Shown piece after piece: positions 1 through 62,526 of a stretch of DNA of 64,000 bases; position 1 is the first letter of the stretch; the number at the start of each line of letters is the position of its first letter. A program made the translations under genes and the position numbers. The stretch is from the IMG/VR virus record IMGVR_UViG_3300003322_000571, positions 1 through 64,000 of that record; one strand, given 5' to 3'. The notes below the pieces were generated by a model. That model saw nothing but the letters and a program-made list of their open reading frames with translations, did not search any database and was not told where the DNA came from.

Positions 1-36
1 AGCAGTGGGTCGGGGGTTCGAATCCCTCCACTCCGA
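1..36 (+). tRNA. 3' half of a tRNA truncated by the window edge (anticodon not visible)
   Basis: T-arm GGGGG-TTCGAAT-CCCTC followed by an acceptor 3' strand. Confidence 0.8.
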
Positions 37-88
37 CAAACTTTCTGGTGATTGAGTGGGTAATCAACTTTTAACCAAGGAGATTACT

Positions 89-307
89 ATGAAAGTGTTT
101 GTATGGAATCGTTTGTCTAACGTGTCTGATAATTACCATTCCGGTGGTGGATTAGTAGTATTCGCGGATAACGAGGAACGTGCATGTCAACTGGCAACAG
201 AACATGGTGTTGTATTCAGTGAAGGTGAAACTGTGGCAGATGACGTTCGCGTCGTCGACGGTGGATTCGAAGCTGTCTACATCATGCCAGACGCTGGCTG
301 TTGTTGA
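89..307 (+). CDS. hypothetical phage protein
   Basis: AAGGAG RBS before ATG at 89; ORF MKVFVWNRLS. Confidence 0.7.
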   Translation: MKVFVWNRLSNVSDNYHSGGGLVVFADNEERACQLATEHGVVFSEGETVADDVRVVDGGFEAVYIMPDAGCC

Positions 308-425
308 TCTAAAGGCGTCTGAAGGTGTGGCCACGCCGGATGACGTATCGTGGGTGTAAGGCGAGGGGCTTTACATTCAAGCACACAGGGCTGTAGGCAT
401 ATGGTCCGGGAAAGTGTGCACCCTT

Positions 426-496
426 CAGGATATAGTGTAGTGGTAACATACAACCTTCGGAGCGTTGTGTTGCTGGTTCGATTCCAGCTATCCTGA
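426..496 (+). tRNA. tRNA-Pro(CGG)
   Basis: CAGGATA/TATCCTG acceptor, loop TT-CGG-AG, GGTTCGATTCC T-arm. Confidence 0.85.
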
Positions 497-498
497 CT

Positions 499-743
499 AA
501 GTTGTTGCGTGGGTAGAGACGTTCATCATTTGTTCGACTCAAATATTTCCCGCAATGTACATTTAAGAGACCATCTTGCATGGTGCTGCGATAATCGCCT
601 AAGTGGCTTGGGATGTTGGTTAGTACTCCCTTGAACGACGATCTTGCAGTTAGGACTAATCTGCACGTGTACATTGCGGGAAATCGGGCCTGGTGGCCCA
701 TGGCGGTGTGAAAACCGTAGTTTCTCCGACTTTAACTCAACTT
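499..743 (+). ncRNA. Y RNA-like (YrlA-type) RNA 1: permuted tRNA-like domain with a large insert
   Basis: Shared terminal motif GTTGTTGCGTGG...GTTCATC / TTTAACTCAAC; T-arm ATTTG-TTCGACT-CAAAT, 17-bp stem ATTTCCCGCAATGTACA/TGTACATTGCGGGAAAT, then D-like arm GGGC-CTGGTG-GCCC. Confidence 0.65.
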
Positions 744-747
744 AAAT

Positions 748-856
748 GCGGGCGCTGGTAGCCTCGCTTGGCGACGGCCATAGTAACCAGAAGAGACTCC
801 GGATCTCTATTGTCTGGCGAATGCGAGTATTGGTTCGATTCCAATAAACCTGCACA
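748..856 (+). ncRNA. tRNA-like RNA with an elongated anticodon arm (CCG loop)
   Basis: GCGGG/CCTGC ends, T-arm ATTGG-TTCGATT-CCAAT, distal hairpin AGAGA-CTCCGGA-TCTCT. Confidence 0.55.
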
Positions 857-931
857 GAATTTAGTAAAGCCCTCTGCGAAAGCATTGACACTAAGTTCTG
901 CTACAAGGTTACTTGTAGCAACCAACTGATT

Positions 932-1081
932 ACTGTTGCGAAGTGCAGAATTCCTTCAGAAACTGTCGAGTGTAAACTCTTGGAGGTTCGAATCCTCCCC
1001 AATGGCCATATCGAAAGTGCTGGCAGGTGGCGAAACTGGTAGACGCGAAAGTCCAAAAAGTCTGTACAACTTAATCTCAGT
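932..1081 (+). ncRNA. Y RNA-like RNA 2: circularly permuted tRNA-Leu(CAG)-like domain
   Basis: CTGTTGCGAAG-TGCAGA-ATTCCTTC ... TCTGTAC-AAC-TTAATCTCAG; inside, the variable arm and T-arm come before the D-arm (GGCGAAACTGGTAGACGC). Confidence 0.75.
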
Positions 1082-1089
1082 GTCAAATT

Positions 1090-1174
1090 GGATGACTTAC
1101 TTCCTAGGTGGAAGCACAGCCTCGAAAGCTGATGATCTCGGAAACGGGATGGGGGTCGGTACCTCAGTCATCCG
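1090..1174 (+). tRNA. tRNA-Ser(CGA), non-canonical (probable 8/4 fold)
   Basis: GGATGACT/AGTCATCC acceptor, CAGC-CTCGAAA-GCTG, long variable arm, G73. Confidence 0.75.
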
Positions 1175-1177
1175 CAA

Positions 1178-1320
1178 ATGTGTTGTTGCGTAGTGTAGGA
1201 TTTCTTCATATCCCACGCCGTGTACGTAGGTTCGATTCCTACCTGCCGAGATTCTTGGCAGTCGTCTAGTGGTAGGACAATGGCTTCAAAAAGTGCCTGT
1301 ACGAATTTGACTCAACATAT
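1178..1320 (+). ncRNA. Y RNA-like RNA 3: circularly permuted tRNA domain
   Basis: TGTTGTTGCGTAG-TGTAGG-ATTTCTTC ... CCTGTAC-GAA-TTTGACTCAACA; T-arm GTAGG-TTCGATT-CCTAC, acceptor closed by a loop, then D-arm GTCTAGTGGTAGGAC. Confidence 0.8.
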
Positions 1321-1323
1321 CTT

Positions 1324-1413
1324 GGAACGTAGCGTGCTGAGGATGCACAACGAGCTTTGAACACTCGGGCTGTCGGTGAAGAGCCGGCAATGGTTCGACT
1401 CCATTACGTTCCT
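1324..1413 (+). tRNA. tRNA-Ser(TGA), divergent
   Basis: GGAACGT/ACGTTCC, loop TT-TGA-AC, long variable arm, T-arm. Confidence 0.75.
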
Positions 1414-1427
1414 CTTATAGGTGACAT

Positions 1428-1580
1428 ATGAAATTGATTGAATTGATTGTTACATTGCTTGGTGGACTAATCTCCACAGCACTTTGGATTATCCTTTGGT
1501 TTAACCCGTTGTGGTTCAGAGAGGATTTGCTTAATAAGTACTATCGATCGAACTTTTCATATTTCAACCCGTTCCGATAA
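1428..1580 (+). CDS. small membrane protein (50 aa)
   Basis: AGGTGA RBS; hydrophobic N-terminus MKLIELIVTLLGGLISTALWIILW. Confidence 0.55.
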   Translation: MKLIELIVTLLGGLISTALWIILWFNPLWFREDLLNKYYRSNFSYFNPFR

Positions 1581-1585
1581 TTTTT

Positions 1586-1716
1586 GGTAGATTGGTGTAA
1601 CGGTAGCACGCGTAAACTACCACTAATCGATCTTGTCTCGTCTAGCGACGTTGCGTAGAAAAGTGTTACTTCGCTTTCATTCGCGCGCGGTGGGGGTTCG
1701 AATCCCTCGTCTACCT
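1586..1716 (+). ncRNA. Y RNA-like RNA 4: normally ordered tRNA body with the shared stem in place of the anticodon loop
   Basis: GGTAGAT/GTCTACC acceptor with D- and T-arms; insert TTGTCTCGTC-TAGC-GACGTTGCGTAG...TTACTTC. Confidence 0.7.
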
Positions 1717-1722
1717 CAAATT

Positions 1723-1748
1723 AAAGTCGCTTCGGCGACTTTTCCTTT
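1723..1748 (+). terminator. intrinsic terminator
   Basis: AAAGTCGC-TTCG-GCGACTTTT. Confidence 0.7.
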
Positions 1749-1845
1749 TCCGGGCATGGTGCCCAAACTACAGGAAGACAGATATGGCTGTCGATTGGGA
1801 GTTCGAATCCCCCAATTCCTGCAAACTCAAAACTTACCAATAAAA

Positions 1846-2085
1846 ATGAGTTACAATCTGAAAGAAATGGTCCAAGGTGACCGAAAAGTCCACTTCAACT
1901 TCTACCGTAAGGGCGAACTTTGGTATAAGACAGAGTGTGGATTTGAGTTTCCCGTTCCAGTTGCTGATACAGGTGATGGAACGTTCTTGGCATCCGATCG
2001 AGCGATGCTTTTCATGCGGTACATCCGCAAACAGATTGACTCTATCAAGGAAGGAATGAGCGATGTCTCTTCTGCAACGAATTAA
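1846..2085 (+). CDS. conserved-type hypothetical phage protein
   Basis: ORF MSYNLKEMVQGD...LWYKTECGFEFPVP. Confidence 0.7.
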   Translation: MSYNLKEMVQGDRKVHFNFYRKGELWYKTECGFEFPVPVADTGDGTFLASDRAMLFMRYIRKQIDSIKEGMSDVSSATN

Positions 2086-2506
2086 AGATGACCAACTTGC
2101 TGCTCGTAAAGCACGCGACACGCTGAAAGCGACGTTGCTGACGACGTTGATCGGTGAAGCCACTACTGTCAAGCCTGACGGATCCCGTGGTGGCTCGGAT
2201 GCAGAAGTAACTGCACTGATTAAGAAGTTCATCAAAAACACGAATGAAGTACTGAAGGCGCTAGGTTCGATTGAAGGTGGTGCTGCAATGCAACCGCTTG
2301 CTGAACTGGCAATTCTGGAAACGTACCTTCCGAAGCAACTGTCAGAAGCTGAATTGACCGCAGCAGTTGCCGAAATCGTTGGCCATTTCCGCGAAAAGAC
2401 GAATCCTGTCACGATGGGAATGGTGATGGGTGCACTGAAGGCTGGGTTCGAAGGCCAGTATGACGGTAAGATGGCGAGTGCAGTTGTAAAGGCAGCTGTG
2501 GCGTGA
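2063..2506 (+). CDS. GatB/YqeY domain protein
   Basis: MSLLQRIKDDQLAARKARD; ELAILETYLPKQLSEAEL; MGMVMGALK; DGK motifs. Confidence 0.9.
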   Translation: MSLLQRIKDDQLAARKARDTLKATLLTTLIGEATTVKPDGSRGGSDAEVTALIKKFIKNTNEVLKALGSIEGGAAMQPLAELAILETYLPKQLSEAELTAAVAEIVGHFREKTNPVTMGMVMGALKAGFEGQYDGKMASAVVKAAVA

Positions 2507-22736: not shown

Positions 22737-22951
22737 TGGAACTAAAGGTACGAGCAATTGTCCGTGTTAAGCGAGCAAACGTCGAGTTTGCTCCAGGACT
22801 TGGAATTGGTGTCCTTGCAACACAAGAGTTCAAAGTTCAAGTGCCGTTGGGTCGAACTGTGACCGATCACAGAGTTTCAGCTTGCATTCATGATGTTGGA
22901 CAAGCATTGCTTGACGATAGTGTAGAAGTAATCTACGAGGAAGTGAAATGA
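22736..22951 (+). CDS. hypothetical protein
   Basis: Translationally coupled ORF. Confidence 0.6.
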
Positions 22952-24021
22952 AAATCTACCTTGTCGGCGGTGCAGTTCGCGATATCCTTCTTGGTCTTGA
23001 GCCGAAGGATCGTGACTACGTCGTTGTTGGTGCAACTCCTGAAGATATGCTCGCTAAGGGCTTTTCGAAAGTTGGTGCATCGTTTCCTGTGTTCCTTCAT
23101 CCTGAAACTGGTGAAGAGTACGCTCTTGCACGTACCGAACGGAAGACGGGCGTTGGTTACAACGGGTTTGACGTGACGTTCGATACGTCTATCACTCTGG
23201 AAGATGACCTTCGTCGTCGTGATCTGACGATCAATTCAATGGCAATGGACCTCGAAACGAACGAGATCATTGATCCGTTCGGTGGTCAAAGTGATCTCAA
23301 GCGAAAGATCCTCCGTCATACAAGTGAAGCGTTTGCTGAGGATCCGGTTCGTGTTCTTCGTACTGCTCGGTTCGCAGCTCGGTACGGGTTTGATGTGTCA
23401 GAAACGACACTGGAGCTGATGGAACAGGTCGCTCCAGAACTTGACCATGTTCCTGCGGAACGAATCTTCGCCGAGTTCCAGAAGGGCTTGATGGAGAAAG
23501 CTCCGTACAGGATGCTTGGTGTACTGGTACAGTGCTACGCTGACAACGTTAAGTCGGTTGAACCATTTCTTCGTGGTGATCATGATCTGTGGCAACGTCT
23601 GCACCTTGTTCGAGATGATACGCCGTTGCATGTTCGGTTTGCTCTGATCGCTCGTCGCTTCCACCCGGAAGATTACGAAGCGTGCAAGATTCCTACAGAC
23701 CTTGCACGAGTGGCGAAAGCAGTTCAGTCGCACTTCTATCAATGGAAGGGACTTCGTACTTGCTCTGATGAACGGTTCGTTAAGATGTGTGACAGATACC
23801 GTGCTTTCAGCAACCCGGACTTCTTCCAGCAAGTGCTCGATGTATTTGAATTCATTGAACATCCGTACGCGATCAAAGGTGTATGGCGTGAACCTATCAA
23901 CGAACGTCTGGCGTTGGCAACGAGCATCGATGCTGCAACAATTGTTGCTAGTCTGCCGATTAAAGACGGCAAGTTGATTCAGGCGAAGATTCACGAAGCA
24001 CGTCTTGCCGCAATGAAGTAA
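22948..24021 (+). CDS. cca: tRNA nucleotidyltransferase (CCA-adding enzyme)
   Basis: [40 protein letters not shown]. Confidence 0.95.
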
Positions 24022-32927: not shown

Positions 32928-32944
32928 CAATATGTGTACAAAGC

Positions 32945-33027
32945 TCCACAGTAAGCATAATTGGTACTGCAACGCACTGTTAATGCGTCTTCCTTGAGTC
33001 TTGCTGGTTCGAGTCCAGCCTGTGGAG
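32945..33027 (+). tRNA. tRNA-Asn(GTT) with an enlarged variable loop, nested in an inverted repeat
   Basis: ACGCA-CTGTTAA-TGCGT. Confidence 0.85.
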
Positions 33028-33041
33028 CTTTGTACACATAT

Positions 33042-33119
33042 TCCGGGAGAGGCGCCGTGGTGGCAACCGCTTGACTGTTAATCAAGATTAGACTGGTTCG
33101 ACTCCAGTTCCCGGAGCCA
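33042..33119 (+). tRNA. tRNA-Asn(GTT)
   Basis: CTTGA-CTGTTAA-TCAAG; GCCA end. Confidence 0.9.
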
Positions 33120-35283: not shown

Positions 35284-35290
35284 CAAGAAT

Positions 35291-35369
35291 TTGCGGCTGC
35301 GTAGCAACACGGTTACTTCTTTGACTCTTAATCAAAACCATAACACCGTTAGCGATTTTATCTCCGCAA
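35291..35369 (+). ncRNA. Y RNA-like RNA 5: minimal, displaying a tRNA-Lys(CTT) anticodon arm
   Basis: GCGGCTGCGTAG...GGTTACTTC-[TTTGA-CTCTTAA-TCAAA]...TTTATCTCCGC. Confidence 0.72.
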
Positions 35370-35388
35370 CTTAATTTCTGGACTGACA

Positions 35389-62390: not shown

Positions 62391-62446
62391 CACACAACCC
62401 TAATATTTCTGTTGGGGTAACGTACTCAACCATATATACTTTCTTC

Positions 62447-62513
62447 AGCTGTTGCGTAGTTCAAGGGTTACTTCTTTTGGTGAAACTATCCCCTTGACGT
62501 TTTAATCTCAGCT
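62447..62513 (+). ncRNA. Y RNA-like RNA 6: minimal
   Basis: AGCTGTTGCGTAG-TTCAAGGG-TTACTTC...CCCTTGAC-GTT-TTAATCTCAGCT; TATACT -10 box just upstream. Confidence 0.75.
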
Positions 62514-62526
62514 TTAACATATGTAC

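What the first reader, a model, noticed from the sequence alone, without database searches (positions are those of the whole stretch)
499..743. Large Y-like RNA with a ~110-nt structured domain hung on a 17-bp acceptor-like helix
Seen: the T-arm and D-like arm flank the perfect helix ATTTCCCGCAATGTACA/TGTACATTGCGGGAAAT. It encloses several small hairpins (ACCAT/ATGGT, GCGAT/ATCGC, CCTAAG/CTTGGG, TGCAG-TTAG/CTAA-T-CTGCA). Inference: an extra effector domain of unknown function attached to a Ro-binding scaffold.
Basis: partly seen in the sequence, partly recalled or inferred. Interest (0 to 1): 0.7.

Follow-up and report, generated by a model that had tools for sequence, protein, structure and literature searches.

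The report
Phage Y RNA with oversized loop
This is a tRNA-mimicking "Y RNA" gene (the RNA partner of the Ro60/Rsr protein) of a 350-kb soil phage, a known kind of RNA. Its unusual 106-base extra piece is a lineage-specific, apparently unstructured loop expansion rather than a demonstrable new functional domain.

Summary
Window 498-744 (+) folds as a closing stem, a T arm (528-544), a perfect 17-bp helix (545-561/668-684) and a D-like arm (686-699).

It belongs to the YrlA class of Ro60/Rsr-associated, tRNA-like Y RNAs. It carries both strands of a conserved internal loop (UUGCGUG and GACUUUAACU) between two covarying stems. I modelled the phage family from IMG/VR loci found by RNA motif alone. 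The model shows very strong covariation, and in 12 of those loci an rsr gene lies directly downstream. This phage encodes Rsr at 63.5 kb and six other family members.

Two orthologs in other phage contigs score 63 and 42 bits against the model. They support every helix with compensatory changes. At the tip of the long helix they have loops of only 8 and 15 nt.

The 106-nt insert (562-667) is therefore lineage-specific. It folds no better than shuffled sequence (z = +0.68) and has no copy or homolog anywhere I searched. It is real DNA, because two independent assemblies contain it.

The "Y-like RNA on a Ro-binding scaffold" reading is supported. The "structured effector domain" reading is not. 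No transcript data exist. This is a new variant of a known kind, of moderate interest.

The parts
498..504 (+). P1, 5' strand (UAAGUUG). It pairs with 738-744 and starts 1 nt after tRNA-Pro (426-497).
   Evidence: The family P1 helix covaries, with 7 of 8 pairs changed on both sides.
505..511 (+). 5' strand of the conserved internal loop (UUGCGUG; family consensus UUGCGUA). It is related to the YrlA motif GNCGAAN0-1G and is the putative Rsr contact.
   Evidence: PMC4201824.
512..520 (+). P2, 5' strand (GGUAGAGAC, with U514 bulged). It pairs with 720-727 and is the equivalent of the anticodon stem.
   Evidence: 8/8 pairs in all three orthologs, with compensatory changes. helix 2.
521..527 (+). 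7-nt linker (GUUCAUC) in the place of the variable loop. This subfamily has no V hairpin.
528..544 (+). T arm: 5-bp stem AUUUG/CAAAU with loop UUCGACU.
   Evidence: (D2).
545..561 (+). Acceptor-like stem (AS), first strand. The first 7 nt (AUUUCCC), then G and CAA, mirror a tRNA 3' end of the form ...AUUCCCC-R-CCA.
   Evidence: I1; tRNA genes with the same T arm and 3' end.
562..667 (+). 106-nt lineage-specific insert at the tip of the AS. It shows no significant structure, no homolog and no second copy.
668..684 (+). AS, second strand (17/17 pairs with 545-561).
686..699 (+). D-like arm: GGGCC/GGCCC with a 4-nt loop UGGU. The GG is kept in both orthologs.
703..718 (+). Extra 5-bp hairpin with loop GUGAAA, between the D arm and P2. 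It is shared with the G002 ortholog (one compensatory pair) and absent in L055b.
720..727 (+). P2, 3' strand (GUUUCUCC).
728..737 (+). 3' strand of the conserved internal loop (GACUUUAACU). The same sequence occurs in several other phage members.
738..744 (+). P1, 3' strand (CAACUUA). A tRNA-like gene starts about 4 nt downstream.

Best explanation
Window 498-744 is a gene for a YrlA-class Y RNA, a non-coding RNA that mimics tRNA and partners with the ring protein Ro60/Rsr. The same 350-kb phage encodes that protein.

Anatomy, which is shown:
- The 5' and 3' ends pair (P1).
- A conserved asymmetric internal loop follows (UUGCGUG opposite GACUUUAACU), then a second stem (P2).
- From P2 spring a T arm, a closed acceptor-like stem and a D arm. 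This is a tRNA elbow without an anticodon.

How it most likely works, which is inferred from studied Y RNAs:
- The RNA is made as part of a tRNA/Y-RNA array transcript.
- It is freed by the tRNA-processing enzymes that cut its neighbours: tRNA-Pro ends 1 nt upstream and a tRNA-like gene starts about 4 nt downstream.
- P1, the loop and P2 bind phage Rsr.
- The tRNA-like module tethers or gates a host partner such as PNPase.

The special feature is a 17-bp acceptor-like stem whose tip carries 106 extra nucleotides. I read these as a lineage-specific expansion at a structurally permissive tip, far from both the Rsr module and the elbow. I do not read them as a folded domain. The expansion may be tolerated as it is, or it may be trimmed out.
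For: 1. Family motifs and architecture.
- GTTGCGWAG lies upstream of a T arm in 6 places of this genome and in dozens of IMG/VR phage contigs.
- The order T arm, closed stem, D arm is the YrlA order (PMC4201824).

2. The family model.
- Model R1 was built from 16 phage sequences.
- It finds about 50 full-length members in the loci.
- 89.0% of cells are paired, against 55.8% in shuffles.
- The covariation score is 0.422, against 0.076 or less when partners are slid.
- 30 of 32 pairs change on both sides.

3. Link to Rsr.
- In 12 loci found through the RNA motif alone, a TROVE/Rsr homolog lies directly downstream on the same strand.
- Rfam YrlA (RF02553) aligns full-length to member L016 at 38.9 bits, E 4.9e-6.
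- This genome has a TROVE ORF at 63535-65250.
- The two complete related jumbo phages also have a TROVE ORF and 5 model hits each, four of them full-length.

4. Orthologs.
- L055:363-498 scores 63.3 bits and L067:1421-1566 scores 42.3 bits, both full-length against R1.
- blastn ties the window element to the latter at E 1.5e-10.
- All helices keep pairing through compensatory changes.

5. The insert.
- The orthologs' tip loops are 8 and 15 nt.
- Beyond the first 7 bp of the stem, the family median is 8 nt and the two orthologs have at most 28 nt. Here the count is 126 nt.
- The insert has z = +0.68, no copies and no homologs.
Against: - No expression data exist. No RNA run holds the element.
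- Model R1 cannot span the window element itself because of the insert. Membership therefore rests on module-by-module mapping and on the scored orthologs.
- Rfam YrlA gives no hit at E <= 10 anywhere in 1-2200.
- The literal YrlA motif GNCGAA is not matched. The sequence here is UGCGUG.
- The element lies 63 kb from rsr, not within 4 kb.
- The D loop has only 4 nt.
- The 17/17 perfect helix around an apparently neutral insert is not explained by neutrality alone.
Confidence: 0.75

Rival explanations
1. The insert is an intervening sequence that is cut out, giving a two-piece Y RNA held together by the acceptor-like stem. The cut could come from RNase III on the 17-bp duplex. It could also come from RNase P plus 3' trimming and CCA addition, as for M. 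smegmatis YrlA. This rival is compatible with the main identification and differs only in the fate of the insert.
For: - M. smegmatis YrlA is cleaved by RNase P in this very loop. Its 5' half gains CCA, and both halves stay bound to Rsr (PMC4201824).
- Here the inner 7 bp (GGGAAAU/AUUUCCC) followed by G-CAA copy a tRNA end. Real tRNA genes with the same T arm end in AUUCCCC-R-CCA.
- Several family members carry N-CCA right after a 7-bp stem.
- The phage encodes a CCA-adding-type nucleotidyltransferase at 22948-24021.
- The helix is perfect over 17 bp.
Against: - Nothing was tested, because there are no reads.
- The RNase P site is buried in a continuous helix. The 5' 'leader' is fully paired, which normally disfavours RNase P.
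- The sequence is CAA, not CCA.
- The orthologs also have long stems (12 and 15 of 17 pairs) without any insert. The long stem therefore did not arise to excise one.
Confidence: 0.25
2. The 106 nt form an extra, selected effector domain, such as a protein- or RNA-binding platform, that gives this Ro60 RNP a new partner.
For: - The insert sits at the distal tip, where an added module would not disturb the Rsr module or the elbow.
- It is retained in a near-identical phage from another study.
- The enclosing helix is perfect.
- Poorly structured loops of other Y RNAs do tether PNPase. This rests on established knowledge of the D. radiodurans complex, summarised in PMC4201824 and PMC12135203.
Against: - It has no excess stability.
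- It is absent in both orthologs.
- It has no homolog and no second copy.
- It shows no similarity to other Y RNA units.
- The relative that retains it is only about 1% diverged, so its retention says nothing about selection.
Confidence: 0.12
3. It is a decaying paralog, a Y RNA pseudogene disrupted by an insertion within a multi-copy array.
For: - The 5' motif departs from the family consensus (UGCGUGG instead of UGCGUAG).
- The conserved UUAC is missing.
- The D loop is minimal.
- Six other family copies exist in the genome, so one could be lost.
Against: - The same peculiarities (short V, long stem, small D loop) are shared by orthologs in two other phage contigs.
- Those orthologs show compensatory changes in every helix and score significantly against the model.
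- All helices in the window copy are intact: 17/17, 8/8, 5/5, 5/5 and 7/8 pairs.
Confidence: 0.1
4. It is a circularly permuted or intron-containing tRNA gene that yields a decoding tRNA after processing.
For: - The T arm, 7-bp acceptor and D arm lie in permuted order.
- The element sits in a tRNA array.
- The T arm and acceptor strand closely match real tRNA genes.
Against: - There is no anticodon arm. The only hairpin there has a 6-nt loop GUGAAA.
- The position is occupied by the conserved Y-RNA internal loop and by P1/P2.
- ARAGORN and the Rfam tRNA model find nothing at 498-744.
Confidence: 0.02

Closest known systems
YrlA (Y RNA-like A) of bacteria and mycobacteriophages; Rfam RF02553; Chen et al. 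2014, PMC4201824
   Same: - The ends pair into a stem that carries a conserved purine-rich 5' motif: GNCGAAN0-1G there, UGCGUAG/UGCGUGG here.
- The order is T arm, closed acceptor-like stem-loop, D arm.
- The RNA is associated with an rsr gene in the same genome.
- tRNA-like T-loop and D-loop GG nucleotides are present.
- Several Y RNAs occur per genome.
   Different: - It scores below Rfam's gathering threshold. The best family member reaches 38.9 bits against 69, and the window copies give no hit at E <= 10.
- It lies 63 kb from rsr inside a tRNA array, not within 4 kb.
- It has no V hairpin.
- Its acceptor-like stem has 17 bp plus a 106-nt tip, where the family median tip is 8 nt.
- Its D loop has 4 nt.
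- It has an extra hairpin between the D arm and P2.
M. smegmatis YrlA, processed form (PMC4201824, section read)
   Same: - A 7-bp acceptor-like stem is followed by a tRNA-like 3' end inside the loop.
- It sets a precedent that this loop can be opened by RNase P and given CCA while both halves stay on Rsr.
   Different: Here the stem continues for 10 more base pairs and the loop is 106 nt. Cleavage has not been observed.
Yrl1/Yrl2 of Thermus phage phiLo (PMC12135203)
   Same: - They are phage-encoded Y-like RNAs with a 5'-3' stem flanking an internal bulge that carries a CGAA-type motif.
- They bind the phage's Ro60 and, with it, host PNPase.
   Different: - Those are short stem-bulge-stem RNAs next to the Ro60 gene. 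They resemble window 62444-62516 and 35289-35371.
- The element studied here carries a full tRNA-like module and the insert.
rRNA intervening sequences / expansion segments (established knowledge, resemblance only)
   Same: Extra, poorly conserved sequence sits at the tip of a conserved helix of a structured RNA, enclosed by a perfect duplex.
   Different: It is a different RNA class, and excision by RNase III has not been shown here.

Membership tests
YrlA-class Y RNA (Chen et al. 2014; Rfam RF02553) | Conserved 5' motif GNCGAAN0-1G in the stem formed by the 5' and 3' ends | tested here: inconclusive
   The literal pattern is absent. The related UGCGUGG is present (504-512). The phage-family consensus is UGCGUAG/UGCGAAG. 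A conserved opposite strand GACUUUAACU lies at 728-737.
YrlA-class Y RNA (Chen et al. 2014; Rfam RF02553) | T arm with a tRNA-type T loop | tested here: met
   528-544: 5-bp stem with loop UUCGACU and closing pair G-C. The family T helix is 98% paired.
YrlA-class Y RNA (Chen et al. 2014; Rfam RF02553) | Closed acceptor-like stem-loop lying between the T arm and the D arm | tested here: met
   545-561/668-684, 17/17 pairs. The orthologs have 12/12 and 15/17 pairs, with compensatory changes. All 7 pairs of the family AS helix covary.
YrlA-class Y RNA (Chen et al. 2014; Rfam RF02553) | D arm with conserved GG in the loop | tested here: met
   686-699, loop UGGU. The ortholog loops are AAGGU and CUGG. 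The loop is much shorter than the family's 7-9 nt.
YrlA-class Y RNA (Chen et al. 2014; Rfam RF02553) | Conserved YUAY that begins the V loop | tested here: not met
   The family has UUAC-UUC. The window element and its G002 ortholog have ACGUUC and no V hairpin.
YrlA-class Y RNA (Chen et al. 2014; Rfam RF02553) | Encoded within about 4 kb of rsr on the same strand | tested here: not met
   rsr lies at 63535-65250 (+), which is 63 kb away on the same strand. A short family member at 62444-62516 is 1 kb upstream of rsr. The contig holding ortholog L055b shows the same split layout.
YrlA-class Y RNA (Chen et al. 2014; Rfam RF02553) | Score at or above the Rfam gathering threshold (69 bits) | tested here: not met
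   No YrlA hit at E <= 10 in window 1-2200. The best phage-family member, L016, reaches 38.9 bits.
YrlA-class Y RNA (Chen et al. 2014; Rfam RF02553) | Bound by Ro60/Rsr in vivo or in vitro | not testable with these tools
No RNA reads exist.
Phage Y-RNA family defined here (model R1) | P1, internal loop, P2, T, AS and D modules in register with the model | tested here: inconclusive
   All modules map by hand and both orthologs score full-length at 63.3 and 42.3 bits. cmsearch cannot span the 247-nt element because of the 126-nt stretch beyond the first 7 bp of the stem.
tRNA | Cloverleaf with an anticodon arm and free acceptor ends | tested here: not met
   ARAGORN and Rfam RF00005 give no hit at 498-744. 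The acceptor-like stem is closed and there is no 7-nt anticodon loop.

The most novel reading that the evidence does not exclude
The 106-nt tip is a selected add-on. It could be a tether for an extra partner. It could also be a piece that is excised to leave a split Y RNA with tRNA-like ends that the phage's own CCA-adding enzyme can extend. Either way it would be the first Y RNA known to carry a modular extension on its tRNA-like acceptor arm.
Probability: 0.12. Interest if true: 0.6.

Novelty: new variant of a known kind. Interest (0 to 1): 0.4.

Why it matters
Y RNAs and Ro60 are conserved from bacteria to humans, yet what their variable "effector" modules do is still largely open.

- This phage lineage carries seven Y-like RNAs, most of them embedded in tRNA arrays far from rsr.
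- They belong to a divergent clade that Rfam's YrlA model does not reach.
- That widens the known repertoire of phage Y RNAs and offers many natural variants, including a long-stem subfamily and this insert-bearing copy, for testing which parts matter.
- The insert marks the acceptor-like tip as a place where the scaffold tolerates a large addition. That is useful to know for engineering or for mapping partners.
- By itself the insert gives no sign of being a new functional domain.

Tried and rejected
- Transcript evidence. Public runs holding the sequence are DNA metagenomes at low depth. The single 'RNA?' run holds only 1320-1456, a tRNA-Ser region.
- Rfam at E <= 10 over 1-2200 gave nothing at 498-744 and no ribozyme or intron family.
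- Close relatives by exact patterns. Three patterns in IMG/VR, two in metagenomes and one in GTDB genomes gave only two orthologs, L021/L067 and L055. Most hits of the T-arm pattern were ordinary tRNA genes.
- Insert as a mobile or repeated element. It has no other copy in the genome and no relative in phage records or IMG/VR.
- TGTACA...TGTACA as a target-site duplication. I rejected this because ortholog L055b has an equally long 17-position stem without any insert.
- Insert as an internal duplication or as a captured Y-RNA unit. There is only a 12-nt repeat (30 of 2000 shuffles score as well) and no similarity to other units. A faint echo of the loop motifs (GUUGGUUAG, CGACGAUCUUGC) scored 7.2 bits, E 0.014, and I take it as chance.
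- Antisense ORF 309-701 (130 aa). It has no Pfam or PHROG match and overlaps tRNA-Pro.
- Reading the array in 'tRNA order', with halves of neighbouring units pairing (GGCAGGU at 1024 with ACCUGCC at 1241). I rejected this for the element studied because orthologs conserve the closed acceptor-like hairpins.
- Rsr-RNA complex prediction. The tool did not fold it, so it gives no evidence either way.
- RtcB. None is present in this genome.
- Sigma-70 promoter and terminator scan. Nothing informative lies near the element. The array's likely terminator is at 1723-1742.

Full report
CONTEXT. The window is the first 64 kb of a 350,089-bp IMG/VR phage record with direct terminal repeats. Its G+C content is 48%. 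ARAGORN predicts 56 tRNA genes and one questionable permuted tmRNA. No isolated phage is a close relative. The genome encodes a TROVE-domain (Ro60/Rsr) protein of 571 aa at 63535-65250. It also encodes a CCA-adding-type nucleotidyltransferase, a NAMPT-type nicotinamide phosphoribosyltransferase and an ADP-ribosylglycohydrolase. The finding lies in a non-coding stretch (about 310-1420) packed with tRNA and tRNA-like genes.

THE OBSERVATION.
- The T arm is at 528-544.
- A perfect 17-nt inverted repeat lies at 545-561/668-684, with 106 nt between the arms.
- A D-like arm is at 686-699.
- An outer closing helix completes the fold (coordinates verified).

The helix is far beyond chance. Only three perfect inverted repeats of 17 nt or more within 150 nt exist in the whole genome, and none of 15 nt or more appears in five shuffled genomes. 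The 245-nt element folds at z = -3.52. The DNA is real. A Logan contig of the probable source run spans 300-1000 without a difference. A contig from a soil metagenome of a different study covers 623-828, including the junction of insert and helix, with two substitutions.

WHAT IT IS. The sequence GTTGCGWRG recurs upstream of T arms at 504, 935, 1185 and 1650 and at genome position 349909. It also occurs at 62451, in a short member that has no T arm. A pattern built from this motif plus a T loop recovered 64 IMG/VR loci. Many of them share GTTGCGTAG, then 7 nt, then TTACTTC, about 20 nt, a T arm, a 7-8-bp hairpin and a tRNA-type D arm.

This is the architecture of YrlA, the tRNA-like Y RNA of bacteria and mycobacteriophages. 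YrlA has a 5' motif GNCGAAN0-1G, a conserved YUAY, a T arm, a closed 'acceptor' stem-loop and a D arm, with the ends paired (PMC4201824).

Aligning 16 members showed five helices:
- P1, 8 bp, formed by the two ends;
- P2, 8 bp;
- T, 5 bp;
- AS, 7 bp;
- D, 4 bp.

Between P1 and P2 lies a highly conserved asymmetric internal loop, UUGCGUA opposite GACUUUAUCU. The covariance model R1 found 136 hits in 0.6 Mb of loci, about 50 of them full-length. On that alignment 89.0% of cells pair, against 55.8% in shuffles. The covariation score is 0.422, against at most 0.076 with slid partners. Thirty of 32 pairs show changes on both sides. The alignment was fitted to the model, which flatters the numbers, but the margin is very large.

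THE LINK TO Ro60/Rsr. The loci were found through the RNA motif alone. In 12 of them tblastn with this phage's Rsr finds a homolog directly downstream on the same strand. Examples are L066, with RNAs at 2133-2700 and rsr from 2742, and L016, with RNAs at 733-961 and rsr from 537 on the minus strand. Rfam's YrlA model aligns full-length to the L016 member at 38.9 bits (E 4.9e-6), below its gathering score of 69. The family is therefore a divergent phage branch of YrlA/YrlB-type Y RNAs. Phage Y-like RNAs are already known in mycobacteriophages, CcrColossus, Bacillus phage G and Thermus phage phiLo. In phiLo they bind the phage Ro60 and host PNPase (PMC12135203).

THE ELEMENT ITSELF. It maps onto the family module by module:

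| Coordinates | Module |
|---|---|
| 498-504 / 738-744 | P1 |
| 505-511 (UUGCGUG) and 728-737 (GACUUUAACU) | internal loop strands |
| 512-520 / 720-727 | P2, with U514 bulged |
| 521-527 | 7-nt linker |
| 528-544 | T arm |
| 545-561 / 668-684 | AS |
| 686-699 | D arm |
| 703-718 | extra hairpin |

The sequence GACUUUAACU is identical to the 3' loop strand of several other phages. R1 cannot span the element, because the stretch beyond the first 7 bp of the AS is 126 nt. Two orthologs can be scored.
- G002 is the 183-kb contig of L021. blastn matches both halves of the element there, about 10 nt apart (E 1.5e-10 for the 5' half). The ortholog, L067:1421-1566, scores 42.3 bits.
- L055:363-498 scores 63.3 bits.

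Among the three sequences every helix keeps pairing through compensatory changes:
- P2 is 8/8 in all three, with three pairs changed on both sides between the window and G002.
- AS is 17/17, 12/12 and 15/17.
- The D stem sequences are entirely different but paired.
- The extra hairpin is shared with G002 and has one compensatory pair.

The subfamily is marked by no V hairpin, a long AS and a 4-5-nt D loop that keeps GG.

The T arm plus the first AS strand (AUUUG-UUCGACU-CAAAU-AUUUCCC-G-CAA) closely resembles the 3' end of real tRNA genes that end in AUUCCCC-R-CCA. This fits the tRNA ancestry proposed for YrlA.

THE INSERT. The orthologs close the AS with loops of 8 nt (L055b) and 15 nt (G002). 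Across full-length family members the stretch beyond the first 7 bp has a median of 8 nt, and the two orthologs have at most 28 nt. Here it is 126 nt. L055b has the same 17-position stem without an insert. The long stem is therefore ancestral to the subfamily, and the 106 nt expand its apical loop.
- The insert alone folds no better than shuffles (z = +0.68).
- It has no second copy in the genome.
- It has no Rfam match at E <= 10.
- It has no relative in 50,697 phage records or in IMG/VR by exact word.
- It has no similarity to other Y RNA units.
- It has no supported ORF on either strand.

Two of them would need impossible 1-2-nt loops as written, and together they are at chance level. I conclude that the 'structured effector domain' is not supported. 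The simplest reading is a lineage-specific expansion at a permissive tip. The perfect 17/17 stem around it is not explained by this reading.

HOW IT LIKELY WORKS.
- Shown: family membership by anatomy and orthology, covariation of the scaffold, and co-occurrence with rsr.
- Inferred: the RNA is released from an array transcript by processing of its neighbours, since tRNA-Pro ends at 497 and a tRNA-like gene starts near 749. P1, the loop and P2 bind the phage Rsr, because in studied Y RNAs Ro60 contacts mainly the conserved 5' strand (PMC4201824). The tRNA-like elbow engages a host factor such as PNPase or a tRNA-binding enzyme.

A live alternative for the insert is excision. M. smegmatis YrlA is cleaved by RNase P in exactly this loop and receives CCA, and both halves remain on Rsr. 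This phage has its own CCA-adding-type enzyme. However, the site here is buried in a continuous duplex and reads CAA, not CCA. RNase III cutting of the 17-bp duplex is another untested route.

WIDER PICTURE. Model R1 finds six further members in this genome:

| Position | Score (bits) | Note |
|---|---|---|
| 928-1084 | 62.9 | |
| 1178-1320 | 118.5 | used in model training |
| 349902-350023 | 56.5 | |
| 1643-1754 | 31.3 | |
| 62444-62516 | 42.7 | short form without tRNA module, 1 kb upstream of rsr |
| 35289-35371 | 40.1 | short form without tRNA module |

The contig holding ortholog L055b shows the same layout. Short Y RNAs lie just upstream of rsr, and the tRNA-like copies sit in a tRNA array 26 kb away. 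Both complete related jumbo phages have a TROVE gene and five model hits each, four of them full-length.

VERDICT. The Y-RNA reading is supported and can be made precise: a YrlA-class RNA of a divergent phage clade and a long-stem subfamily. The extra-domain reading is unsupported. I rate it a new variant of a known kind, with interest of about 0.4. The main uncertainties are the absence of any expression or binding data and the fate of the insert.

Noticed in passing
window 1584-1716 (+), terminator-like hairpin 1723-1742: This looks like a circularly permuted member of the same Y-RNA family in tRNA order.
- The acceptor is GGUAGAU/GUCUACC, and a D arm is present.
- Next comes the 3'-type loop motif CGAUCUUGUCUC.
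- P1 is closed as a small hairpin (GUC-UAGC-GAC).
- Then follow the 5' motif GUUGCGUAG, UUACUUC and the T arm.

It would be a tRNA-shaped RNA whose anticodon arm is replaced by the Rsr-binding module. G002 has an ortholog with compensatory changes in the acceptor and P2, and with P1 closed by GUAA. Only these two were found.
   Followed up: partly
window 62444-62516 and 35289-35371 (+): Two short Y RNAs of YrlB/Yrl type have P1, the conserved loop and P2 but no tRNA-like module. They score 42.7 and 40.1 bits with R1. The first lies 1 kb upstream of rsr, separated from it by two small ORFs.
   Followed up: partly
window 928-1084, 1178-1320; genome 349902-350023: Three further YrlA-like paralogs are interleaved with tRNA genes. 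In 928-1084 the acceptor-like hairpin is degenerate. Its second strand GGCAGGU (1024-1030) is perfectly complementary to ACCUGCC (1241-1247) of the next unit, so two adjacent units could also pair with each other.
   Followed up: partly
window 749-855 (+): An odd tRNA-like gene has a good T arm (829-845), an anticodon-like stem-loop with loop CUCCGGA, an aberrant D region and a long variable region. ARAGORN does not call it. It gives only a weak tRNA-Sec match of 18.5 bits.
   Followed up: no
window 32929-33042: A perfect 23-nt inverted repeat, the longest in the genome, has arms flanking and overlapping tRNA-Asn 32945-33028. It lies between tRNA-Lys and a second tRNA-Asn.
   Followed up: no
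window 310-425 (+): Three consecutive stable hairpins lie between a small ORF and tRNA-Pro (MFE -44.4 kcal/mol, z = -2.42). Their function is unknown.
   Followed up: no
window 1320-1456: A run labelled as RNA from 'organism A' holds one adapter-flanked 137-nt fragment covering tRNA-Ser (1324-1414) plus 42 nt downstream, with 1 mismatch. It hints that a relative of this phage was present in that sample. It says nothing about the element studied.
   Followed up: no
L018, L015, L033, L066, L008 (IMG/VR loci): Many phage contigs carry tandem arrays of 3-6 Y-like RNAs directly upstream of rsr. In several members the acceptor-like loop begins with N-CCA right after a 7-bp stem, for example L018 and L042.
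   Followed up: partly
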